In this document: positions 9,676 to 55,651 of the stretch, piece after piece
Position numbering within the stretch: position 1 is the first letter of the stretch
How the letters are laid out: each line of letters opens with the position of its first letter
IMG/VR virus record: IMGVR_UViG_3300028558_000791
Span: 186,001-250,000 of that record
DNA length: 64,000 nucleotides
Strand: one strand, 5' to 3'
The notes under the pieces: generated by a model
Seen by the model: the letters and a program-made list of their open reading frames with translations, nothing else
Database searches by the model: none
What the model was told of the DNA's origin: nothing
Translations under genes and position numbers: made by a program

Positions 9676-9683
9676 TGATATAT
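9676..9683 (+). promoter_or_regulatory. TGATATAT promoter-like box
   Basis: Recurrent 8-mer at gene boundaries; here just after a terminator and 10 nt before ATG 9694. Confidence 0.6.
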
Positions 9684-25000: not shown

Positions 25001-25534
25001 TTCTTTGATGGAGAGTTTGTGACTGTTCAGGACATTAAGCGATCCAAAGATAAGACCAATGTATCTTCTGTCAAAGGCATCATCCGAGACTTTTTTGAAT
25101 TTCGTGTCAAGAAGGAAGGTAAGTATTATGGTCAGCCAATGGTTAAGGCCGTAATGGAAGATAAGAATGGTGACCAATGTACATTGACGATCTTCCCAGA
25201 TCGTTGGAAGGTTGTGCAAGAAAGGATTGGAGAACTCAACAAGAAGGCTGAATTCGATGTAGGTATCGCATTGTTCTTTTCAGGGAATACCAATTCTTAT
25301 GAAGACGATATGGGTGTCATATTGGATCAATTGTATCATATTGCCCTGCCACCTCCCCTGCCAACCGACTTGAAAGCCAAGAAAATCAACCTCAAAGAGG
25401 CTAAGGCTAAAATGTTTGGAATTAAGGAAGAAGCCGAAAAACCTAAGAGTCCTCAGGAGATACTCGATGAAATCGAGGATACTTTGTATGATGAAGGTCT
25501 TATCGATTTGGATGACGAAAACGAGGATGACTGA
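22019..25534 (+). CDS. dnaE: DNA polymerase III alpha subunit
   Basis: PHP domain (SLHNQTEFSILD, AITDHG), GRGSVGGSL, catalytic FPDIDTDF, STHAGG, KMDTLGL, FNMSHS, OB fold; SD GGAGG before ATG 22019; no intein seen. Confidence 0.97.
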   Translation: MTDFVSLHNQTEFSILDSIISPKGLFKRAKELGQTAVAITDHGTLAGAWDAWKASKETGVKLIIGCECYFQDDAANVNEKFRHIILLAKNAVGYRNLLTLNKKGFDQSSFVGKRVYSVLDWNLLAEHAEGLICLTACGNGIISQPIMKGKLDDAERTLLRLKDLFGENLGIEIQPNNMKRGSNIFNDEIDQDFLNRQLVKLGKKHDIRVVAACNAHYLTKEESSTHDAFLAIGSHQPIHSGFRLRYPVPEFYLKTGDEVKDFFTRVFKDDAQTFIDNSIYFSNLCEVPEWIDPKYSNPSGKELPQFPVKDELDYAQFRTWVATQPEDVQKLEEDKLFLRYRCVMTFDSRVKNLTPEKHKEYMARIDEELDVLEFHGFSSYMLIVADFIDWARKHEIAVGEGRGSVGGSLIAYLLGIHQADPIKYNLIFARFHNKEKSSFPDIDTDFAPSGRPLVQEYLRNKYGADHVAHVSNVNTITPKVYVKDIARVCELGGSKEDAVRIGNEVANCIPAEIHSIDDALAKVPLFAEYAKKYPEFEKYKAICGKYRAWSTHAGGIIISARPLTGLVPLRKDKDGALAIEYDKDKAEENGLVKMDTLGLSTLDTIGQTMKLIKESGKIVPEVISYDEYDQEAYDIISNGDTFCVFQLGTSGGTIDLCKQIKPKSVNDISYINSLARPSARDMRKDFILTKDGKKPFSLLHPTLGRAFNNTFGFGLYEESLMYLAQDVAGWSLHGADRLRKLTKEKGKNPKKAQEWRNEFIKGAVENNVNEAIAKRIWDEVVDKFQGYGFNMSHSILYSMTSYKTAYLKAHFPIEFLMANLMAEVKSNAPDSKGNIEKIKKEIRKRRVKIVPPDINKSQLVYTIEDGNRLITGLDAIKFVGADAIKEIIEKRPFTDFFDFMTRVSSKAVRANSIQALAACGALDSFKIPRKLMFLYCSDYRKKLQVWLKKHDPTVDQFVYPWPAEPDWSMPEVYALEQYYLGESFTCKPALAYGRFFDGEFVTVQDIKRSKDKTNVSSVKGIIRDFFEFRVKKEGKYYGQPMVKAVMEDKNGDQCTLTIFPDRWKVVQERIGELNKKAEFDVGIALFFSGNTNSYEDDMGVILDQLYHIALPPPLPTDLKAKKINLKEAKAKMFGIKEEAEKPKSPQEILDEIEDTLYDEGLIDLDDENEDD

Positions 25535-25542
25535 TATATAAG

Positions 25543-25614
25543 ATACAGACGATATTGGATAATAACAAAATCGACGCATCAACCGAAAAATGATACGAAT
25601 GATATCGTCTGTAT
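25543..25614. repeat. Perfect 13-bp inverted repeat with 46-nt spacer
   Basis: atacagacgatat (25543-25555) / atatcgtctgtat (25602-25614). Confidence 0.9.
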
Positions 25615-25636
25615 ATGCATAATAAGGAAAGTAGTC

Positions 25637-26530
25637 ATGACCAAAATCAAACTCAAGGAATGGGCTGACCGTCACAACCTATCATATTTAACTGCAAATA
25701 GACATTTTCATGCAGGTATGATTCCAGGTGCGGTGCAGCTAGACTCAGGTACCATCCTTGTGGAGGATGAATCTCTGGAGCAGTCCATGGCCGCAAATCC
25801 ATCTCACGGTGATGCAATGTCTCTCTTCCTTAAAAAGACAGTTGAGTTTAGCAAGAACAATTCTACAGTAGAAGATTTTGCTGCTTTCATCATCTCTAAT
25901 TTCCAAATCAGGTTGAATACAACTCCTGATAGTCCTAAATACTCTCGTCGTAAACCAGAAGCGGATGAAGTGCAAAAACACTTTCAGCAATTCTTACCAG
26001 ATAAAGAATCCATTGAGCATCTAAAAGCCGTTAAGTCTTTGCTCAAGGAAGGTAAGCAAGCTGGTGATGTTGTGCCTGCCGAGGCAGCGCTCCCCGAGGC
26101 AGCGCTCCCCGTGGCAGCCACTTCACCCGTTGCTGGTTTAGATGAGAATCTCATGCAAGATTTTTTGGCGTCTCCTAGCGCCACAGACGTACGTATGTAC
26201 GGGAATGTTACTGAAGGTCTGGTATCACGAAGTGTTGATTTTGACACAACTCCACAACAGATCAACTATACCGGCTCTACAAGCCAGACCTTCAGTAACG
26301 CTTCTTTCAGCGAAGGCGTTAGTAGTAACTACATGGTAAGTGGTGTAAACGCAGCAAATCCAGTCTCACTCGGTTTTGTTGGAGCTAGCGTAATACTTAA
26401 TGCTGTCCCAGCCTCCGCTCCATTTCAACCAACACAAAAAGAATTATTGTCAGCCACACAGGTTATAGAGACAACCGAGACTGACGACCTCCCACGCAAG
26501 CGTGGCAGAAAACCATCTAAGAAGAGATAA
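25637..26530 (+). CDS. DNA-binding protein: IS607/MerR-like N-terminal HTH, no resolvase domain, basic AT-hook-like tail
   Basis: IKLKEWADRHNLSYLTANRHFHAGMIPGAVQLDSGTILV resembles the IS607 TnpA N-terminus; ends PRKRGRKPSKKR. Confidence 0.65.
   Translation: MTKIKLKEWADRHNLSYLTANRHFHAGMIPGAVQLDSGTILVEDESLEQSMAANPSHGDAMSLFLKKTVEFSKNNSTVEDFAAFIISNFQIRLNTTPDSPKYSRRKPEADEVQKHFQQFLPDKESIEHLKAVKSLLKEGKQAGDVVPAEAALPEAALPVAATSPVAGLDENLMQDFLASPSATDVRMYGNVTEGLVSRSVDFDTTPQQINYTGSTSQTFSNASFSEGVSSNYMVSGVNAANPVSLGFVGASVILNAVPASAPFQPTQKELLSATQVIETTETDDLPRKRGRKPSKKR
26081..26110 (+). repeat. In-frame 15-bp tandem duplication (EAALP x2)
   Basis: gaggcagcgctcccc twice, followed by a partial third copy. Confidence 0.9.
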
Positions 26531-32525: not shown

Positions 32526-32550
32526 ATCTATCACTCCCTAGATAGTACTG

Positions 32551-32588
32551 AAAAGCCTGCAACTTAACTGTTGTGGGCTTTTCTTTTT
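32551..32588 (+). terminator. Rho-independent terminator
   Basis: 13-bp stem aaaagcctgcaac/gttgtgggctttt (2 G-U pairs), loop ttaact, T tract. Confidence 0.85.
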
Positions 32589-32592
32589 CAAT

Positions 32593-32600
32593 TGATATAT
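32593..32600 (+). promoter_or_regulatory. TGATATAT promoter-like box, probably giving a leaderless transcript
   Basis: 7 nt before ATG 32608, no SD, directly after a terminator. Confidence 0.65.
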
Positions 32601-32607
32601 TACAAGT

Positions 32608-33168
32608 ATGGCAAAAACTATACTTGGCTTCGACGCCTCTTCGACTACTATTGGATATTGTGTATTAAGTTGGGATGAAACTACTAATGACATTTCCTTT
32701 GTCAAAGCAGGATATATCAAACCTAAGAAGACTGGAACTATTATTGAAAGAATAGTAGATACTAGAAATCAGGTTCAGAAAGTAATTGTAGATGCCCAAC
32801 CAGACTATATTGGAATTGAGGAAATTATTCAGTTCATGAAAGGTAAAAGCACGGCTAAGACTATTATCATGCTAACTACATTCAACAGAATGGTATGTTT
32901 GACCTCTTACGATTATCTGGGTAAATCTCCAACACTCTATAGTGTAATGACTATTCGTCATGGATTGAAGTTCGGCAAAGAATTACCAAAAAAAGAAGAA
33001 ATGCCGGCCCTTGTCGCCCAACATTTAGGAATTACATTTCCTTACGAGTATAATAAAAAGGGCAACATCAAGGTCGAAAGTTTTGACAAAGCTGACGGCA
33101 TCGCCGTTGCCCTTTATCATGCCCGAGTATTATCGGGTAAGGTGAAGCCCAAGGGTAAGAAGAAATGA
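32608..33168 (+). CDS. ruvC: RuvC-like Holliday junction resolvase
   Basis: TILGFDASSTTIGY, IGIEE, DKADGIAVA (D, E, D, D catalytic pattern). Confidence 0.85.
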   Translation: MAKTILGFDASSTTIGYCVLSWDETTNDISFVKAGYIKPKKTGTIIERIVDTRNQVQKVIVDAQPDYIGIEEIIQFMKGKSTAKTIIMLTTFNRMVCLTSYDYLGKSPTLYSVMTIRHGLKFGKELPKKEEMPALVAQHLGITFPYEYNKKGNIKVESFDKADGIAVALYHARVLSGKVKPKGKKK

Positions 33169-34094
33169 ATCTTAAGGAAGCCTACACAACTCTAGAATTG
33201 GCCCAGGGCTCGTCCCCGGAGGAAGCCAAGAAGAAGTACCGAGAACTTACTAAAAAGTATCACCCCGATATAAATAAGGACCCCGATGCCGAGGGTAAGT
33301 TCAAGAAAATCAATGAAGCCTACCAAATCATACAAACTGGTAAGGGGACTGATCTACAAGATAGGCATCCACAACAAGGCGGTTTTCATAGACAGCAGCA
33401 GGTAATTCAATTAGAGAACGTTGAAGTTCATCTAACCATCTCATTCAAAGAATCTGTTCTTGGATGTAAGAAAGAAATCAAATACGCTCGTCAAAGCAAA
33501 TGCCAAGACTGTAATGGAGCTGGAGACATCAAGCTCAACAACGGTTGTAAGAAGTGTGGCGGTAAAGGTCAAATTGTTAATCGACAAGGTAACATGGTTA
33601 TGGTTACAACATGTAATGAATGTTATGGGCGGGCCAATGTAGCTGAATGTTCAGCTTGTCATGGCCATGGGACCGTACAGGCAGACGTGTCTGTGCACGT
33701 GTCTGTGCCTGCGGGAATTATGAATAACAATACTCTTCGTCTACAAGGCATGGGTAATTACGCAGGTTCATTCCTGGGAGTGGCTGACCAACATACTGAC
33801 GCTTTCTGTCATGTTACTGTAACACAAGAGCCGGGCCTTAATATAGAGGGACCGCATGTCATTAGTCATCTAACGCTTCCTTTGTTAGACGCTTTGCGTG
33901 GTTGTAAGCGTAAGGTAAAGACGATTCATGGAGACAAAGAGATTCAAGTCAAACCGCAGTCTAGAAACCGTGATGAGGTAATTATACCCCATTGTGGTGT
34001 CAGCGGTACTGGAGACCAAAAAGTAGTTCTAGACGTTGAATATCCTAAGAACACTGACAAATTGATTGGCGTTCTGTTAGATGAGGTAATATAA
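33165..34094 (+). CDS. dnaJ: DnaJ chaperone (J domain, four CxxCxGxG-type repeats, C-terminal domain)
   Basis: KKYHPDIN, FKKINEAY, CQDCNGAG, CKKCGGKG, CNECYGRA, CSACHGHG, LRLQGMG. Confidence 0.95.
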   Translation: MNLKEAYTTLELAQGSSPEEAKKKYRELTKKYHPDINKDPDAEGKFKKINEAYQIIQTGKGTDLQDRHPQQGGFHRQQQVIQLENVEVHLTISFKESVLGCKKEIKYARQSKCQDCNGAGDIKLNNGCKKCGGKGQIVNRQGNMVMVTTCNECYGRANVAECSACHGHGTVQADVSVHVSVPAGIMNNNTLRLQGMGNYAGSFLGVADQHTDAFCHVTVTQEPGLNIEGPHVISHLTLPLLDALRGCKRKVKTIHGDKEIQVKPQSRNRDEVIIPHCGVSGTGDQKVVLDVEYPKNTDKLIGVLLDEVI

Positions 34095-34459
34095 TGCCAC
34101 TCGCACTAAACTGTACGAATACACACGTAGATAAATTTGGTAAGAAGAGACACTGTGGTCAAGTAGAACCATATATGGATCCCAAGACTGAGCAAGTGTT
34201 TTGTCCACTATGTGATAATGAGATGCCTAATGTAACTCACTTTACTAAAGTGACGTTAAAGAATCTTAGACAATTCCGCACAAAGCCACAGATTCCGTTT
34301 GGGGTCAAGTGTCAAAAGTGTGGAAAAGAGGCTCAGCCGGCGATAGTCAACGATGATATAGTATGTCCGTCGTGTGCTAATCCGCACAGCCACCTGAGCG
34401 AGCCGTTCAAAATGATGTTGAAGGATAAGCTCCGAACCGTTAATAAAGACGTCACTTAA
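34094..34459 (+). CDS. Multi zinc-ribbon hypothetical protein
   Basis: CPLC, CQKC, CPSC; coupled to the primase core gene. Confidence 0.7.
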   Translation: MPLALNCTNTHVDKFGKKRHCGQVEPYMDPKTEQVFCPLCDNEMPNVTHFTKVTLKNLRQFRTKPQIPFGVKCQKCGKEAQPAIVNDDIVCPSCANPHSHLSEPFKMMLKDKLRTVNKDVT

Positions 34460-35224
34460 ATGCTAGAAAAAATAGTTGAGTCGTGCCGCTTTCTGTTGGA
34501 AAACTATCCGGATGCGCGGCCCAGTAAGTCGTATCTCGACTCTCGCCTTAAAGGGGCAAGCCAGGAAGATTTCCGGTTTGGCTACTTCCCAGGGGTAGAA
34601 AACATTTCTGTACTCGCCGATTTGGTGGGTGAAGAATTTTTACAGAAGGAGAAGCTGCTCTTCGTAAAAGATATAGAGGATTCCCTTTTCCCTCGTAAAG
34701 TGCAGTCCTGTTACTTTGAGGACCACCCTCTGGTTATGCCATTCCGCGATCCCTACGGAAGAGTGGCTGGGCTGATTGGGCGCACCATCCTCTCTGATAA
34801 AGAGCAGAAAGAAAAGAATATCTCTAAATACAAGAATACTAAATTCGAAAAGGGAAGTCTTCTATTTGGTCTTTATGAGAATAAGCAACATATATTAGAC
34901 CGAAAGTTCGTTTATATCGTAGAAGGACAAATCGATGTTATAAAGGCATCTGAGATAGGTTTAAGAAATATTGTTGCTTTAGGTAATTCTTCTATCACAT
35001 CCTATCAATTTTCTGTCATTAGCAGATACTCCAGTAACCTGTTTTTGTTATTGGATAATGATGAAGCTGGCCAAAAAGGGAGGAAACAGATCATTAGTAA
35101 GTTTGGCCACTTGGCCAACATTCGTAATTTTTACATACCAGACGACTACAAAGACATCGATGAATACATCACTAAGGGGGGAGTTAGTGATCAGGAAGAA
35201 TTGTCTTTTGGCGTCAAGGATTGA
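34460..35224 (+). CDS. dnaG: DnaG-type primase catalytic core (TOPRIM) without zinc-binding domain
   Basis: YLDSR, FRFGYFP, VMPFRDPYGRVAGLIGR, KYKNT, LFGL, IVEGQIDV, LDNDEAG, KDIDEY. Confidence 0.92.
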   Translation: MLEKIVESCRFLLENYPDARPSKSYLDSRLKGASQEDFRFGYFPGVENISVLADLVGEEFLQKEKLLFVKDIEDSLFPRKVQSCYFEDHPLVMPFRDPYGRVAGLIGRTILSDKEQKEKNISKYKNTKFEKGSLLFGLYENKQHILDRKFVYIVEGQIDVIKASEIGLRNIVALGNSSITSYQFSVISRYSSNLFLLLDNDEAGQKGRKQIISKFGHLANIRNFYIPDDYKDIDEYITKGGVSDQEELSFGVKD

Positions 35225-35239
35225 AATTTATTAAGAAAT

Positions 35240-35304
35240 TTCCATCTTTCCCTTATTGATATATTGTGATTGTGTCTTTCAGTATCTAGGGGTAAAAGAT
35301 GGAA
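35240..35304 (+). promoter_or_regulatory. Hairpin burying the SD and ATG of the sigma-like gene, with TGATATAT in its loop
   Basis: ttccatcttt (35240-49) pairs perfectly with aaagatggaa (35295-304, contains the ATG); ccctta pairs with tagggg after a 2-nt bulge; box at 35257-35264. Confidence 0.8.
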
Positions 35305-35739
35305 CGCAGAAAAAACAGATCAGATAAGTATCAGTGGGTATTACTCGAAACAGTTTGTTCAAACGATATGATGGAGGCATTTTGCAATGAGGATAGTATC
35401 TCTGCAAGGCTCAATCCGTTTGACTACAACGAGGACCTAATCGAGCTAGAAGAGCAGCTCAAGAAAGAATTTTGGAGAGTCGTAGATACCCTATTGACCC
35501 CAAGACAAAGAGAAGTCATTCGACTTTATGCAGACGGCTATACTCAAATGGAGATTGCCAAGATGCTAAATGTCAACCAAAGTTCAATAACGAAAAGTTT
35601 GAACGGAAATGTAGACTATAAGAACGGAAAGAAAATCTACGGTGGCGCTCGTAAAAAGATCAGAAAGATTATCGAAAATGATGAGAAGATCAAGGATATT
35701 CTGAAAAAGATGAGTGACGCAAGAGACGAAAAATGGTGA
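35299..35739 (+). CDS. Sigma-70 region 4-like HTH protein
   Basis: LLTPRQREVIRLYADGYTQMEIAKMLNVNQSSITKSL...ARKKIRK; no recognisable region 2. Confidence 0.8.
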   Translation: MERRKNRSDKYQWVLLETVCSNDMMEAFCNEDSISARLNPFDYNEDLIELEEQLKKEFWRVVDTLLTPRQREVIRLYADGYTQMEIAKMLNVNQSSITKSLNGNVDYKNGKKIYGGARKKIRKIIENDEKIKDILKKMSDARDEKW

Positions 35740-35769
35740 AAATTCGACATCAGTGATATATGCTGATGT

Positions 35770-36450
35770 ATGAGAGTTTATTATCTTTACAAGATCACTA
35801 ATACGTTTAACGGTAAGATTTACATAGGACAAAGTGTGAACCCACGTTCACGTTGGTACGGACATAAAAAAGAAGCGGAACGTGAAGTTCCACGAATGGT
35901 AATAGCCAGAGCTATCAAAAAATATGGTAGCTCTGGTTTTCTATTTGAGTTAATAGCTTGCTGCTCTAATCAAGAAGATACCAATGAAATAGAGACGGAA
36001 CTCGTACGACAATATGATAGTAGAAATTCTGAAAAAGGATATAATATTGCACTCGGTGGTATGAACGCCCCCAAAACCGAAGAGTGGAAACGTAAGGTTT
36101 CAGAAAAACTAATGGGTCATGAAGTGACACAGCAAACTCGTGACAAAGTTTCTAAAGGTAATACCGGCAAAGTGCGCTCTGAAGAGTTCAAAAAAGACGT
36201 AGGAGATTTTTGGCGAGGTAAAGAGCGTTCGGAAGAGCATCGAGATAATTTATCAGAGGCTCTTAAGGGCAATCAGAATTGGTTGGGCAAGAAACATTCA
36301 GACGAATCTAAGCAAAAAATGTCACAAGCAAATAAGGGCCGAAGACCTGCCGAGATAACAATTCAAAAGTCTCTTGAGAAAACCAAAGGTAAGACCTGGA
36401 AAGTTATAGATGGCAAGAGAGTATGGGTGGATAATGGACAAAGAGACTGA
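35770..36450 (+). CDS. GIY-YIG homing endonuclease with NUMOD3 repeats (free-standing)
   Basis: YLYKITNTFNGKIYIGQS, RWYGH, YNIALGG; repeated H/R-S-EE..+K+S motifs (HSDESKQKMS). Confidence 0.92.
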   Translation: MRVYYLYKITNTFNGKIYIGQSVNPRSRWYGHKKEAEREVPRMVIARAIKKYGSSGFLFELIACCSNQEDTNEIETELVRQYDSRNSEKGYNIALGGMNAPKTEEWKRKVSEKLMGHEVTQQTRDKVSKGNTGKVRSEEFKKDVGDFWRGKERSEEHRDNLSEALKGNQNWLGKKHSDESKQKMSQANKGRRPAEITIQKSLEKTKGKTWKVIDGKRVWVDNGQRD

Positions 36451-36640
36451 TGAACAGTATGCGGAAAGAATTGGTTCGCTTCGTAAAATCTATAAAGTAA
36501 TGGATTTTCTTGAAATCCCATACGACTTTGAGTATGATGGTGATGAGGGTATGAATGTAAGAGATTTATACGATATCCTTATGGATGATGAAAAACTACG
36601 AGTTTTAGTCTCTAAACTTAGGAATAAAGCCTTTTGGTAA
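36434..36640 (+). CDS. Small hypothetical protein
   Basis: 68 aa from ATG 36434, overlapping the upstream stop. Confidence 0.6.
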   Translation: MDKETDEQYAERIGSLRKIYKVMDFLEIPYDFEYDGDEGMNVRDLYDILMDDEKLRVLVSKLRNKAFW

Positions 36641-36756
36641 CAAAAGCGTGGTAATAATCTGAAATCTACCTAGTAGGTTTACCACCAATAAAGTGCAGAA
36701 TTAGTATCAATATTACTCTATTTAATGTAGGTATGTTCTGTTTAACGGGAGACACG

Positions 36757-37218
36757 ATGCCAAAATTTTCGATAGATTACTCAGGCTTGACCAAACTAAC
36801 AAAGAAAGCATATCGTCTTGCTGATGTAAAAGATCAGTTGGAAACTGTGGCTTTTGATGTGGTTAGGTTCAAGGATAGCGACAAGGGTGCAGACCTTTGG
36901 CAGATCCAAAGCGCAGATGATGGTGATTACATCGTTGCTCTATATGATAACGAGGAAGTCGAAAAGACCGCTTCTTCCAACCCTTGGGGTGTGTTCGTGA
37001 CCAAGAATGGTTGCGACTTGCAAATATCTTACAAGGGTGACCCCCTTGTAAGATTAGCCTCAGCTAAGCTTGGTATTCCAAGTTCAGAGCTGCACAAGGC
37101 TGAGCAGTACCTACCAGAAAAACTAGCCGCTAACAAAAAGCTCGTCAAGGCTTTGTTGAGCGAGCTAAGCGAAGCAGCTAGACAAGAGGTATCAAGACGA
37201 TACCCAGAACTGGTTTAA
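36757..37218 (+). CDS. Hypothetical protein, first gene of the head module
   Basis: SD GGAG before ATG 36757; EKTAS motif. Confidence 0.75.
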   Translation: MPKFSIDYSGLTKLTKKAYRLADVKDQLETVAFDVVRFKDSDKGADLWQIQSADDGDYIVALYDNEEVEKTASSNPWGVFVTKNGCDLQISYKGDPLVRLASAKLGIPSSELHKAEQYLPEKLAANKKLVKALLSELSEAARQEVSRRYPELV

Positions 37219-49319: not shown

Positions 49320-49327
49320 TGATATAT
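49320..49327 (+). promoter_or_regulatory. TGATATAT promoter-like box upstream of the portal gene
   Basis: Intergenic; lies between tctaaat (49301-07) and atttaga (49331-37). Confidence 0.55.
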
Positions 49328-51253: not shown

Positions 51254-51272
51254 TGTTTTAAATCCGCCGAAT

Positions 51273-51330
51273 AACCCCTACTTGTGAATAATCACGCATT
51301 GTTTTAGCTATTGCGCACAAGTAGAGGGTT
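51273..51330 (+). promoter_or_regulatory. 14-bp hairpin (one bulge) covering the SD of gene 51334
   Basis: aacccctacttgtg (51273-86) / cacaagtag-a-gggtt (51316-30); 29-nt loop. Confidence 0.75.
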
Positions 51331-51333
51331 TCC

Positions 51334-52569
51334 ATGGATAAATTAGCTCAAAGTAAAAGACAAACAGGTCGTGGTTTTTTCAACGAATTGCGTGAAAAGA
51401 TCAATGCTCCTGGTGCTTTCGTAGAAGGTATATTCAAACCCGAATTAAATAGGGTTATGGAATCCTTAAAAGCACTAGATGACCGTGTTCGTTCAGAATT
51501 AACCGGCAAACAAATTGGCAGTGCCACAGAGCCAGCCATCAAAGAGTCTGCTAAGAAGCTCTTGAGTGACTCTAGAGGTCTTTTCAATCGTCGTGAATAT
51601 ATGTCCGGCGTTTCTGATTTGGCCATGTTTCATAAAAAGCTTCAGGCTATTGTTAATGACATTGATAAGTTCTTTGTTGATGTGAATAAAATTCATCACA
51701 AGTTCTTATTTGATGGAGTTAAGGAAGATAAAATCAACAGACTTCGTGAACACATGGAGCCTAAAGCTGCGTCTTTAATCGCCGATCAACTTCTCAAGGA
51801 AGCTGGCCTTGTTGACTCTCTATTGAATTTCTTTACAACTCGTGGTCGTGGACTTGCTGCTTGGGAAAAGAAGTATCCTAAGGAAATTAAGGCACTTCGT
51901 GATGGTGGCTTCAAGCTGCTAGATCAAGCTGATTCAGTACTAGCTTCCACTATCTCTGTTATGAAAGATATGGCAACTGCTAGAGCTACTCGTAGACCAG
52001 ATGATTATATGGATTATGCCAATAAGATTAAGCAGGACTTCAACAAGTTTGATGCTGCATTTAAATCTTATTATCAAAATGCTGTAATGCCTTGGATGAG
52101 AATCAAGGATCAGATGGAAGCAGAATTAGCAAAGCAGCAAGCTGCGCAACAATCAAGCAATCCAAATGTAGGAAAAACTGAATTAGGTACAGACCCTACA
52201 GTACCGCCAACACCAGGTGGTCCACCTAGTGGTCCTTCAGGTGGATCTCCTATTCCTCCAATGGGTGGTGGTTTTATTAACCCACATCCAGGTGCACCAC
52301 CAGTTCCAGTTGCGGCACCTCCAGTTGAGGAAGCCGCTCCAGATACTCTTCCAGGCGGCTACCAGCCAGAGGCTAAGGTTCGTATTGCCCCAGAGCCACC
52401 CAAGGTCAGAGTTGCTCATGAACAATTCTATAAATCACTTGAGGCCATGGCCGGAGAAGATCCTCGCGTTCTGTGTGGTTACATTGCTAAATATGCTAAA
52501 TCTATTCAAGGAGATGACCCAGAGACTGCTATTTCGCTATTTTCAATCGTCAAGAAACTAAAGGAGTAA
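51334..52569 (+). CDS. Hypothetical helical protein with Pro-rich segment, probably head-associated
   Basis: 411 aa; starts MDKLAQ. Confidence 0.8.
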   Translation: MDKLAQSKRQTGRGFFNELREKINAPGAFVEGIFKPELNRVMESLKALDDRVRSELTGKQIGSATEPAIKESAKKLLSDSRGLFNRREYMSGVSDLAMFHKKLQAIVNDIDKFFVDVNKIHHKFLFDGVKEDKINRLREHMEPKAASLIADQLLKEAGLVDSLLNFFTTRGRGLAAWEKKYPKEIKALRDGGFKLLDQADSVLASTISVMKDMATARATRRPDDYMDYANKIKQDFNKFDAAFKSYYQNAVMPWMRIKDQMEAELAKQQAAQQSSNPNVGKTELGTDPTVPPTPGGPPSGPSGGSPIPPMGGGFINPHPGAPPVPVAAPPVEEAAPDTLPGGYQPEAKVRIAPEPPKVRVAHEQFYKSLEAMAGEDPRVLCGYIAKYAKSIQGDDPETAISLFSIVKKLKE

Positions 52570-54884: not shown

Positions 54885-55651
54885 TTAGAAGATTCCGAGC
54901 TGTAATTCCAGGGGTTCTGTATCGTGGCTCCGGCCCCACTCCACAAGACGTTCTCGAATTACAAGATAAATTAGGGATCAAAAAGATTGTCTCTTTAGAC
55001 CAAGAGATTGGTGAGAAAATTGATCGCGCTTGTCAAATGTTAGGTATCAATCATATCAAATTGTATATTGATCATACTAGAAAGAGTTTGTATGATTTTT
55101 TATCTCAGGATATGAAAAAACTCTTTCTAGAGGGTGGGCCAACATTTGTTCATTGCCATGAGGGTAAGGATAGAACTGGATTGGCCTGCGCTATAGTAGA
55201 ATGTAAATTCCTTGGTAAAGATCCCGAGAAAGCTATTCAAGAGGCAAAGGCTTTAGGGTTTGGTGTTGGCATAGCTCCTCAAACTACTCAGCAGTTTGAG
55301 CGTATCATTCGTCACTGCAAGCCCGATAAGGATACTAATAGTGCTGATATAGTCTCTAATGAACGAGAGTATATTGGTGATAATCGTGATAGTTTCTTGG
55401 ATGAGGGACATCAAGGATCGTTCTCTCCATACCTATCTCAGACTAAGCAAGACCCAGTGGATTCATTATACCCATCTACACTAGACCAATACCCAACTCG
55501 TCAAAATTATGATAGTCCACCATTATTCCGGCATGATCCTAGTGAGAGTGTCACATTACCTAATGTAGGGGAATATGACAACGATGCTGGTCAACGAGGT
55601 TTTGGGCCAGTGGAACGCATGGATGGTTTCTTCTCAGAGGTAGGTCATTGA
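54881..55651 (+). CDS. Cys-dependent tyrosine/dual-specificity phosphatase with acidic tail
   Basis: LYRGSGP, IKKIVSL, P-loop FVHCHEGKDRTG (CX5R). Confidence 0.9.
   Translation: MIRRFRAVIPGVLYRGSGPTPQDVLELQDKLGIKKIVSLDQEIGEKIDRACQMLGINHIKLYIDHTRKSLYDFLSQDMKKLFLEGGPTFVHCHEGKDRTGLACAIVECKFLGKDPEKAIQEAKALGFGVGIAPQTTQQFERIIRHCKPDKDTNSADIVSNEREYIGDNRDSFLDEGHQGSFSPYLSQTKQDPVDSLYPSTLDQYPTRQNYDSPPLFRHDPSESVTLPNVGEYDNDAGQRGFGPVERMDGFFSEVGH

What the first reader, a model, noticed from the sequence alone, without database searches (positions are those of the whole stretch)
35240..35304. Promoter-in-a-hairpin switch on the sigma-like gene
A 16-bp stem (10 perfect pairs, a 2-nt bulge, then 6 pairs with one G-U) buries both the SD (AGGGGT) and the ATG of the sigma region-4 gene. 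The TGATATAT box sits in the loop just past the 5' arm. Read-through RNA from dnaJ-dnaG would be untranslatable, while RNA started at the box lacks the 5' arm and is free. T4 uses this logic for late genes such as lysozyme e and I-TevI. Placing it on a transcription regulator would give a timed or feed-forward switch.
Basis: partly seen in the sequence, partly recalled or inferred. Interest (0 to 1): 0.8.

Follow-up and report, generated by a model that had tools for sequence, protein, structure and literature searches.

The report
Promoter inside a start-site-hiding hairpin
In an uncultivated ~480-kb soil phage, a small DNA-binding regulator gene has its ribosome site and start codon folded into an RNA hairpin that also encloses the gene's own promoter, so probably only RNA made from that promoter is translated; this trick is already known from phage T4 and from IS10.

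Summary
TTCCATCTTT (35240-35249) pairs perfectly with AAAGATGGAA (35295-35304, which holds ATG 35299). After a 2-nt bulge, CCCTTA pairs with TAGGGG, the Shine-Dalgarno. The fold is -21.8 kcal/mol, and the start site is the second most occluded of 68 in the window.

The TGATATATT box between the arms is best read as a host-type extended -10 promoter. It is invariant upstream of this gene in 41 distinct intergenic sequences, follows terminators elsewhere, and sits 6-7 nt before the ATG of at least 10 genes, implying leaderless mRNAs. That predicts a start near 35272, downstream of the 5' arm. The cost of opening the start site falls from about 12-14 to about 4-5 kcal/mol.

Classical covariation on one fixed structure is absent, and many lineages lack any hairpin. 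However, across 31 lineages the segment before the box matches its own start region better than swapped ones (p=0.0013; controls not significant), using different sequences.

Two claims are not supported. The upstream operon uses the same promoter class, so no timing follows. The protein shows only a sigma region 4 / LuxR-type HTH, not a demonstrated sigma factor.

Verdict: a probable guard against translation of read-through RNA, of the T4 / IS10 kind. No 5' ends or translation data exist.

The parts
32550..32583 (+). Intrinsic terminator (14-bp stem followed by a T run) that closes the preceding unit, just before the upstream promoter box
   Evidence: top terminator-like site; sequence
32593..32601 (+). 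Upstream promoter of the same class (TGATATATT). The ATG of RuvC (32608) lies 6 nt after the hexamer, implying a leaderless mRNA. This is the likely source of read-through RNA
   Evidence: The RuvC match begins at residue 4
32608..35224 (+). Tightly packed upstream unit: RuvC-like resolvase, DnaJ, Zn-ribbon protein and DnaG-type primase. It has no strong terminator: one weak terminator-like site lies inside dnaG (34611-34631) and none lies in the 74-nt gap before the HTH gene
35216..35249 (+). Competing hairpin H1 (17-nt arms, 82% complementary, -8.8 kcal/mol). It overlaps the dnaG stop codon and uses the 5' arm of the main stem
   Evidence: I2
35240..35255 (+). 5' arm of the hairpin: an anti-AUG part (TTCCATCTTT) followed by an anti-SD part (CCCTTA). 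It lies about -33 to -18 relative to the predicted transcription start
   Evidence: arm haplotypes
35257..35265 (+). Extended -10 promoter element TGATATATT (hexamer TATATT at 35260-35265). TTGATATATT is invariant in the relatives that have dnaG directly upstream. There is no recognisable -35 element
35272..35273 (+). Predicted transcription start, 7-8 nt after the hexamer. This is inferred, not mapped
   Evidence: The 6-7 nt spacing from hexamer to ATG in leaderless genes: RuvC, the homing endonuclease of this window, and at least 9 loci
35287..35304 (+). 3' arm: SD region TAGGGG (35287-35292), bulge TA (35293-35294), then AAAGATGGAA, which holds ATG 35299-35301 and codon 2
35299..35739 (+). 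Gene for a 146-aa HTH protein (sigma-70 region 4 / LuxR-GerE type). It is 77-100% identical in more than 1000 proteins from huge-phage contigs
35747..35769 (+). A second, weaker box-in-a-hairpin: ACATCAG / CTGATGT (7 bp) around TGATATATG. It is followed directly by the ATG (35770) of a GIY-YIG/NUMOD3 homing endonuclease at leaderless distance
   Evidence: third most occluded start site; I7; z = -1.84, modest

Best explanation
The 74-nt gap between dnaG and the HTH gene holds a host-type extended -10 promoter (TGATATATT, no -35 needed). It lies between the two arms of an RNA hairpin whose 3' arm is the gene's own Shine-Dalgarno sequence and AUG.

RNA that reads through from the RuvC-DnaJ-DnaG unit carries both arms. 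It folds at about -22 kcal/mol and hides the ribosome site. RNA started at the box, near 35272, lacks the 5' arm, so its ribosome site is as open as that of an average gene in the window. The HTH protein would therefore be made essentially only from its own promoter. The hairpin guards against translation of read-through RNA, as in T4 genes e, soc, 49 and I-TevI, and as in IS10 fold-back inhibition.

What is shown directly: the sequence and the predicted thermodynamics.

What is inferred from comparison: that the box is a promoter, where transcription starts, and that the 5' segment and the start region are matched within each lineage.

What is assumed: that read-through RNA is abundant and that the fold blocks 30S binding in vivo.

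No timing role is implied, because the upstream unit uses the same promoter class.
For: Hairpin:
- It is exact, stable and specific.
- The start site is the 2nd most occluded of 68.
- Opening energy is 12-14.6 kcal/mol when the RNA starts at or before 35240. It drops to 3.8-5.2 kcal/mol when the RNA starts at 35270-35274.

Box as promoter:
- It is enriched 9 against 2.5 expected, with a + strand bias.
- It lies right after terminators at 32593 and 11485, and about 45 nt after one at 9676.
- TTGATATATT is invariant in 41 distinct intergenic sequences while the flanks diverge.
- Relatives carry TGTTATAAT or TGATATAAT, which converge on TGnTATAAT.
- The hexamer lies 6-7 nt before the ATG of RuvC, of this window's homing endonuclease, and of at least 9 other genes in relatives (most look like mobile homing endonucleases). 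This fixes the transcription start.

Read-through:
- No terminator-like site lies in the gap.
- A 220-nt metatranscriptome contig, about 96% identical, covers 35159-35376.

Comparison across lineages:
- Among 8 arm haplotypes of the closest clade, 7 keep 10/10 outer pairs. All changes in the 5' arm are C>U opposite G or A>G opposite U. The bulged base varies A/C/U.
- Other lineages hide the start site with different sequences, each matched to its own start region. L108 has TCTTAGTCA / TGACTAAGA, L114 has TTCGTATTGA / TCAATATGAA, L270 has TTCCATATTG / CAATATGGAA, and L094 has another solution.
- Permutation test over 31 lineages: native -10.14 against -8.87 +/- 0.40 kcal/mol, p = 0.0013. For the AUG part alone p = 0.0007. 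Without the window p = 0.0075.
- Controls are not significant: coding segments p = 0.19 and 0.67; far-upstream segment p = 0.08 and leader p = 0.92.
Against: - No 5' ends, no translation data and no cultured host exist.
The centre of the outer stem is broken in 7-8 of 17 aligned relatives.
- About 20 of 41 distinct intergenic sequences with the same dnaG-box-gene order show no more occlusion than shuffles.
- An earlier mean-based test found nothing.
- The permutation signal weakens to p = 0.03 and then 0.08 as kin of the window are removed.
- In many relatives a homing endonuclease gene abuts the HTH gene, which is then evidently translated from a polycistronic RNA without any hairpin.
- One clade member (L275) has a C x C mismatch in the stem.
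- In two of seven folding contexts the stem is outcompeted.
- The upstream promoter is of the same class, so the biological benefit is unclear.
Confidence: 0.55

Rival explanations
1. The hairpin is a neutral, clade-specific accident. A pyrimidine-rich promoter spacer happens to complement a purine-rich SD and AUG region, with no regulatory role. The promoter is real but the fold does nothing.
For: - Perfect 10-nt inverted repeats are common: 10 in the window against about 5.7 expected.
- There is no covariation on the fixed structure.
- Most lineages lack the hairpin.
- Relatives express the gene from polycistronic RNA.
- The whole-fold z score is only -2.45.
Against: - Duplex energy beats all 300 shuffles and all 17 swaps.
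- The start site ranks 2nd of 68 for occlusion.
- Substitutions in the arms are wobble-compatible only, across 7 of 8 haplotypes.
- Different lineages have differently sequenced but matched arms. The permutation test gives p = 0.0013 with negative controls.
Confidence: 0.17
2. The stem is an RNA processing or stability element of the polycistronic RNA. For example, it could be an RNase III-type cleavage site or a protective 3' hairpin for the dnaG message. Occlusion of the start site would then be a by-product.
For: - It is a long, nearly perfect stem at an operon boundary.
- Hairpins of some kind follow the dnaG stop codon in most relatives.
Against: - At 16 bp with a bulge, the stem is short for RNase III (general knowledge).
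- In every lineage where pairing is found, the 3' partner is the SD or AUG, and the match to the AUG region is what co-varies.
- No Rfam family matches.
Confidence: 0.1
3. The inverted repeat works at the DNA level. It would be an operator whose two half-sites flank the promoter, bound by a regulator, perhaps the HTH protein itself.
For: - The repeat brackets the -10 element.
- The gene encodes a DNA-binding HTH.
- The sequence just after the box (TGATT...) is conserved, and TGAT recurs 10 nt apart.
Against: - The half-sites are 45 nt apart.
- Arm variants keep G-U pairs, which are mismatches in DNA and on the opposite strand.
- In other lineages the arms have unrelated sequences but always complement their own start codon region. 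That fits an RNA constraint, not a protein recognition sequence.
Confidence: 0.06
4. A switch of two alternative hairpins coupled to dnaG translation. When ribosomes terminate at 35222-35224 they melt H1 (35216-35249), which frees the 5' arm to close the HTH start site. On untranslated RNA, H1 holds the arm and the start site stays open.
For: - H1 exists (17-nt arms, -8.8 kcal/mol) and shares 35240-35249 with the main stem.
- In the 35215-35340 context the 5' arm pairs upstream with probability 0.78, and the main stem drops to 0.08.
- H1 also remains pairable in L001-type sequences (sequence).
Against: - H1 is much weaker than the main stem (-8.8 against -21.8 kcal/mol).
- The main stem wins in 5 of 7 contexts.
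- The conservation of H1 may simply reflect coding constraint plus the palindromic GAAATTTC repeats.
- This rival was not tested comparatively.
Confidence: 0.07

Closest known systems
Phage T4 genes e (lysozyme), soc, 49 and intron-encoded I-TevI; also I-TevII, I-TevIII, segB and Aeh1 mobE. Long early or middle transcripts form a hairpin that hides the SD and/or AUG, and a promoter just upstream of the ribosome site gives RNA lacking the 5' arm (PMC3014915 section 29; PMC2988022 section 12).
   Same: - A hairpin sequesters the SD and AUG.
- A promoter lies between the arms.
- The gene lies downstream of a longer transcription unit with no terminator.
- A neighbouring homing endonuclease has a weaker version of the same layout.
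   Different: - The inner promoter here is a host-type extended -10, not a T4 late promoter (TATAAATA).
- It belongs to the same class as the promoter of the upstream unit, so no early-to-late timing follows.
- The gene is a conserved HTH regulator, not a lysis, capsid or endonuclease gene.
- The phage is an unrelated, uncultivated phage of about 480 kb.
- There are no experimental data.
IS10/Tn10 fold-back inhibition. Transcripts entering from outside promoters pair an upstream segment with the transposase start site, while RNA from the element's own promoter lacks that segment (Davis, Simons & Kleckner 1985, as cited in PMC13181058; the mechanism is recalled from general knowledge).
   Same: The logic is protection of a dosage-sensitive gene from translation of read-through RNA, without any need for temporal promoter classes. 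This fits the present case better than the T4 timing model.
   Different: This is a phage regulator gene rather than a transposase. No antisense RNA partner is seen. The link was not tested.
Lambda cI, expressed from PRM (leaderless mRNA) and from PRE (leadered). This is from general knowledge.
   Same: One phage genome uses leaderless mRNAs that start at the A of the ATG, produced from sigma-70 promoters. Here that applies to RuvC and to the homing endonucleases.
   Different: The HTH gene itself keeps a leader of about 27 nt with an SD. The control proposed here is hairpin occlusion, not a choice between leaderless and leadered RNA.

Membership tests
T4-type promoter-within-hairpin translational control | An RNA helix sequesters the SD and/or the start codon of the regulated gene | tested here: met
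   By prediction only. The stem is 16 bp and -21.8 kcal/mol. Opening energy is 13.8 kcal/mol against a mean of 5.8. Pair probability is 0.74-0.92 in 5 of 7 contexts.
T4-type promoter-within-hairpin translational control | A promoter lies between the arms, so its transcripts lack the 5' arm | tested here: inconclusive
   There is strong comparative inference that TGATATATT is an extended -10 with a start 7-8 nt downstream. No 5' end has been mapped.
T4-type promoter-within-hairpin translational control | Longer transcripts from upstream promoters run into the gene | tested here: inconclusive
   No terminator-like site lies in 35225-35298. One RNA-library contig spans 35159-35376, but DNA carry-over cannot be excluded.
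T4-type promoter-within-hairpin translational control | The inner promoter belongs to a later temporal class than the read-through promoter, which gives delayed expression | tested here: not met
   The upstream unit starts at the same box type (32593 TTGATATATTA against 35256 TTGATATATTG). The same box also precedes the portal gene (49320).
T4-type promoter-within-hairpin translational control | The long RNA is poorly translated and the short RNA well translated | not testable with these tools
   This needs reporters, toeprinting or ribosome profiling.
Sigma-70 family sigma factor | Region 2 (core binding and -10 recognition) | tested here: not met
   There is no Pfam region 2 hit. PDB profile matches cover residues 44-105 only, apart from one weak longer match to sigma-H (E = 0.029). 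No full-length fold match was found, and the N-terminal 40 residues have low confidence.
Sigma-70 family sigma factor | Region 4 helix-turn-helix | tested here: met
   Sigma70_r4_2 gives E = 8e-7 and 29 bits against a cut-off of 25.7. However, GerE/LuxR and HTH_23 score similarly, and the best PDB hits are RhlR, RcsB and NarL.
Extended -10 (TGn) sigma-70-type promoter | TG one base upstream of a TATAAT-like hexamer, with A at position 2 and T at position 6 | tested here: met
   TG-A-TATATT lies at 35257-35265. Only 4 matches to TGnTATAWT lie on the + strand of the window, and 2 are intergenic.
Extended -10 (TGn) sigma-70-type promoter | Transcription starts about 7 nt after the hexamer | tested here: inconclusive
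   This is inferred from the constant 6-7 nt spacing between hexamer and ATG in leaderless genes. It has not been measured.
IS10-type fold-back inhibition (guard against outside transcription) | The upstream segment that pairs with the start site lies outside the gene's own transcript | tested here: inconclusive
   The 5' arm lies at about -33 to -18 relative to the predicted start. This depends on an unmapped start site.

The most novel reading that the evidence does not exclude
In this lineage of huge soil phages, a nearly invariant HTH regulator may be kept under the sole control of its own promoter by a guard hairpin that has been rebuilt repeatedly. Different lineages use different 5' arms, each matched to its own start codon region. 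The conserved TGAT..TGAT sequence at and just after the -10 element would be the regulator's own operator. Together these would form an autoregulatory loop that read-through RNA cannot bypass. The same portable leaderless promoter also travels with homing endonuclease genes.
Probability: 0.15. Interest if true: 0.55.

Novelty: new member of a known kind. Interest (0 to 1): 0.4.

Why it matters
If the reading is right, it gives the first promoter motif, transcription-start rule (hexamer plus 7-8 nt) and evidence of leaderless mRNAs for a widespread clade of uncultivated 450-510 kb soil and freshwater phages.

It would also show that the T4 / IS10 way of silencing read-through RNA is used outside T4-like phages, on a core regulator rather than a late or selfish gene.

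It offers a concrete, cheap test (long against short leader reporters). It also offers a rule for annotating such phages: look for TGnTATAWT followed 6-7 nt later by ATG.

It does not reveal a new mechanism.

Tried and rejected
- **GenBank phages.** Neither the DNA nor the protein gave any match, so there is no annotated relative.
- **Rfam.** A permissive search of 34800-36900 found nothing.
- **Fixed-structure covariation.** Counting pairs on 17 relatives gave no excess over shuffles. I therefore dropped the claim of a family-wide conserved 16-bp hairpin.
- **First duplex test.** With 18 clusters the mean native energy equalled swaps and shuffles. Only after adding loci and testing matched against permuted pairs, with controls, did a signal appear.
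- **RNA evidence.** Only two metatranscriptomes hold 4-5% of the sampled words, both stored as contigs, so no 5' ends can be read.
- **General rule of inverted repeats around every box.** The repeats at 49320 (7 bp) and 9676 (5 bp) are not in the minimum-energy folds and are not significant (z = 0.36 and -0.92). The homing endonuclease repeat is only modest (z = -1.84).
- **A -35 element inside the 5' arm.** No acceptable TTGACA-like hexamer lies at a 16-18 nt spacing (sequence).
- **The stem as terminator of the upstream unit.** No U run follows it on the + strand, and it is not listed.
- **Sigma factor identity.** Profile and fold searches found only the HTH.
- **More relatives.** Querying IMG/VR with the L108 protein returned essentially the same contigs.

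Full report
**What is there**

The window is part of an uncultivated phage genome of about 480 kb from a rhizosphere metagenome. Locus L002 is identical and comes from an IMG/VR contig of 480,838 bp. It has no relative in GenBank phages.

Nearly all genes lie on the + strand. Around the finding they are:
- SSB
- a strong terminator (32550-32583)
- a RuvC-like resolvase (32608-33168)
- DnaJ, a Zn-ribbon protein, and a DnaG-type primase (ending at 35224)
- a 74-nt gap
- the 146-aa gene (35299-35739)
- a GIY-YIG/NUMOD3 homing endonuclease (35770-36450)

**Checking the observation**

The stem is exactly as described. The outer stem has 10 perfect pairs, 35240-35249 with 35295-35304, and includes ATG 35299. 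A 2-nt bulge follows. The inner stem has 6 pairs, 35250-35255 with 35287-35292, with one G-U, and covers the SD.

The fold of the 96-nt region is -21.8 kcal/mol, with a modest z of -2.45. More specific tests are stronger:
- The 5' segment and the SD-AUG segment form a -19.1 kcal/mol duplex. Shuffles give -9.2 +/- 2.2 (0 of 300 as good), and 0 of 17 foreign segments do as well.
- The energy needed to open -14..+3 is 13.8 kcal/mol. That is second highest of 68 genes, whose mean is 5.8 with sd 3.0.

Two caveats apply:
- Perfect 10-nt inverted repeats are not rare in this DNA: 10 observed against about 5.7 expected.
- In two of seven sequence contexts the stem loses to a competing hairpin (35216-35249) or to coding sequence.

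**The box is a promoter of the extended -10 type**

TGATATAT occurs 9 times against 2.5 expected, 7 of them on the + strand. Copies at 32593 and 11485 sit directly behind terminators, and the copy at 9676 lies about 45 nt behind one.

Upstream of this gene, TTGATATATT is invariant in 41 distinct intergenic sequences from relatives, while the flanks are often unalignable. Relatives without the exact box have TGTTATAAT, TGATATAAT or TGATATAGT at the same place, which converge on TGnTATAAT.

Most telling is the spacing. The hexamer ends 6-7 nt before the ATG of RuvC (32608), of the endonuclease in this window (35770), and of at least nine other genes that follow the HTH gene in relatives, most of them apparently mobile endonucleases. 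None of these has an SD. That is the geometry of leaderless mRNAs starting at the A of the ATG. It puts the start of the HTH gene's own transcript at about 35272-35273, downstream of the 5' arm.

With that start, the opening energy of the ribosome site falls from 12-14.6 to about 4-5 kcal/mol, close to the window mean of 5.8.

**Read-through**

No terminator-like site lies between dnaG and the box. A 220-nt contig from a soil metatranscriptome, about 96% identical and of the L001 type, covers 35159-35376. That span includes the end of dnaG, both arms and the start of the gene. This is compatible with read-through RNA but is not proof, since RNA libraries can contain DNA.

**Comparative evidence**

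Results are mixed and need care.

Evidence against a conserved structure:
The centre of the outer stem is broken in 7-8 rows.
- About half of the 41 distinct intergenic sequences show no more occlusion than shuffled controls.
- In many relatives an endonuclease gene is wedged directly against the HTH gene, with no hairpin at all.

So the 16-bp hairpin is not a conserved structure of the family.

Evidence for selection on pairing within the closest clade (at least 96% protein identity):
- Seven of eight arm haplotypes keep 10/10 outer pairs.
- The only variable 5' arm positions are C/U opposite G and A/G opposite U.
- CCCTTA, CCTCTA and the TAGGGG>TGGGGG variant all stay paired.
- The bulged base varies freely.
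- One haplotype (L275) has a C x C mismatch.
- These G-U changes would be mismatches in DNA or on the opposite strand, which points to the + strand RNA.

Evidence from other lineages, which hide the start site with unrelated sequences matched to their own start region:

| Lineage | 5' arm | 3' arm | Note |
|---|---|---|---|
| L108 | TCTTAGTCA | TGACTAAGA | protein starts MTKR |
| L114 | TTCGTATTGA | TCAATATGAA | protein starts MNKR |
| L270 / L271 / L282 | TTCCATATTG | CAATATGGAA | |
| L092 | CCATATTGA | TCAATATGG | |
| L094 | its own two-part solution | | includes a U-A to A-U exchange |

A permutation test over 31 lineage representatives asks whether each 5' segment binds its own start region better than those of other lineages.

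| Comparison | Result |
|---|---|
| 5' segment vs own start site | native -10.14 vs -8.87 +/- 0.40 kcal/mol, p = 0.0013 |
| 5' segment vs AUG part | p = 0.0007 |
| 5' segment vs SD part | p = 0.07 |
| Without the window's own lineage | p = 0.0075 |
| Control: coding segment +20..+48 | p = 0.19 |
| Control: coding segment +60..+88 | p = 0.67 |
| Control: far-upstream segment vs start site | p = 0.08 |
| Control: leader vs start site | p = 0.92 |
| Kin of the window removed | p = 0.03 |
| All wider kin of the window removed | p = 0.08 |

I read this as moderate evidence that occlusion of the start codon by the segment before the box is selected in part of the family, and has been re-matched as the sequences drifted.

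**Mechanism and its limits**

The best reading is a guard against read-through. RNA coming from the RuvC-DnaJ-DnaG unit cannot be translated for this gene. RNA from the gene's own promoter can.

This is the logic of T4 genes e, soc, 49 and I-TevI (PMC3014915, PMC2988022) and of IS10 fold-back inhibition (Davis et al. 1985, cited in PMC13181058).

The upstream unit is driven by the same box (32593), and the same box also precedes the portal gene (49320). There is therefore no evidence for two temporal promoter classes. The IS10-style rationale, a defined dose set by the gene's own promoter, fits better.

A conserved TGATT element right after the -10 element could be an operator. That would make such a guard useful for autoregulation, but this is speculation.

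**The protein**

It is 77-100% identical in more than 1000 proteins from contigs up to 511 kb. Pfam, PDB profile search and fold search find only a sigma region 4 / LuxR-GerE helix-turn-helix at residues about 45-105, with no region 2. 'Sigma-like' should therefore be read as 'HTH regulator of the sigma region 4 / LuxR type'.

**Verdict**

This is a new member of a known kind of control, in a phage lineage with no experimental system. Everything beyond sequence and predicted thermodynamics is inference. The decisive data are 5' end mapping and long-versus-short leader reporters with compensatory mutations.

Noticed in passing
window 51262-51345 (arms 51275-51286 and 51316-51328), upstream of gene 51334-52569, just after the portal gene: This is the most occluded start site in the window (18.4 kcal/mol). 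A 12-bp stem with one bulge hides the SD, and an outer AUCC/GGAU stem covers the AUG. The fold is -26.3 kcal/mol with z = -4.64 (0 of 200 shuffles). The whole gap, including the loop (TGTGAATAAT ... CATTGTTTTAGCTATT), is conserved in relatives whose protein is only 55-76% identical, with wobble and bulge-removing changes. It could be a translational operator or a second promoter-in-hairpin.
   Followed up: partly
window 35740-35770 and 35770-36450: A GIY-YIG/NUMOD3 homing endonuclease has its own TGATATATG box in the loop of a 7-bp inverted repeat (35747-53 / 35763-69). Its ATG lies 7 nt after the hexamer with no SD, so the mRNA is leaderless. It has the third most occluded start site in the window, but the fold is only modestly unusual (z = -1.84). 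The endonuclease plus a small ORF (36410-36640) form an insertion relative to L001, L004 and others.
   Followed up: partly
relatives L021, L041, L049, L138, L142, L144, L148, L152, L153 (downstream of the HTH gene); window 32593-32610: The same TG(A/T)TATA(A/T)T box lies exactly hexamer + 7 nt before the ATG of various genes in relatives (most look like mobile homing endonucleases), and hexamer + 6 nt before RuvC in the window. This points to a portable leaderless promoter and a host that translates leaderless mRNAs. Other endonuclease genes are inserted between dnaG and the HTH gene in many relatives.
   Followed up: partly
window 36641-36756: A non-coding region after the HTH gene (AATAAAGT ... 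GTATCAATATT ... CTCTAT ... GGGAGAC, then ATG at 36757) is conserved in nearly all relatives, down to 77% protein identity. It does not contain the TGATATAT box. It may be a different promoter or operator class, and possibly a target of the HTH protein. The true start of the next gene is probably 36757 rather than 36733.
   Followed up: no
window 25532-25636: Between the DnaE-type polymerase and the next gene lies a perfect 13-nt inverted repeat (25543-25555 / 25602-25614). A TGATATAT box sits just before its 5' arm, and a TGTATATG box lies inside its 3' arm.
   Followed up: no
window 26207-26299 and 55077-55130: There are two more perfect inverted repeats: 16 nt (26207-22 / 26284-99) and 13 nt (55077-89 / 55118-30). 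Each exceeds the length of the repeat in the finding.
   Followed up: no
window 35222-35243 and relatives (for example L001:1418-1445): The palindrome GAAATTTC occurs twice, 3 nt apart, directly at the dnaG stop codon. An A/U-rich hairpin or palindrome of some kind follows the dnaG stop in most relatives. It could be a weak terminator, a 3' end protector or a protein binding site.
   Followed up: no
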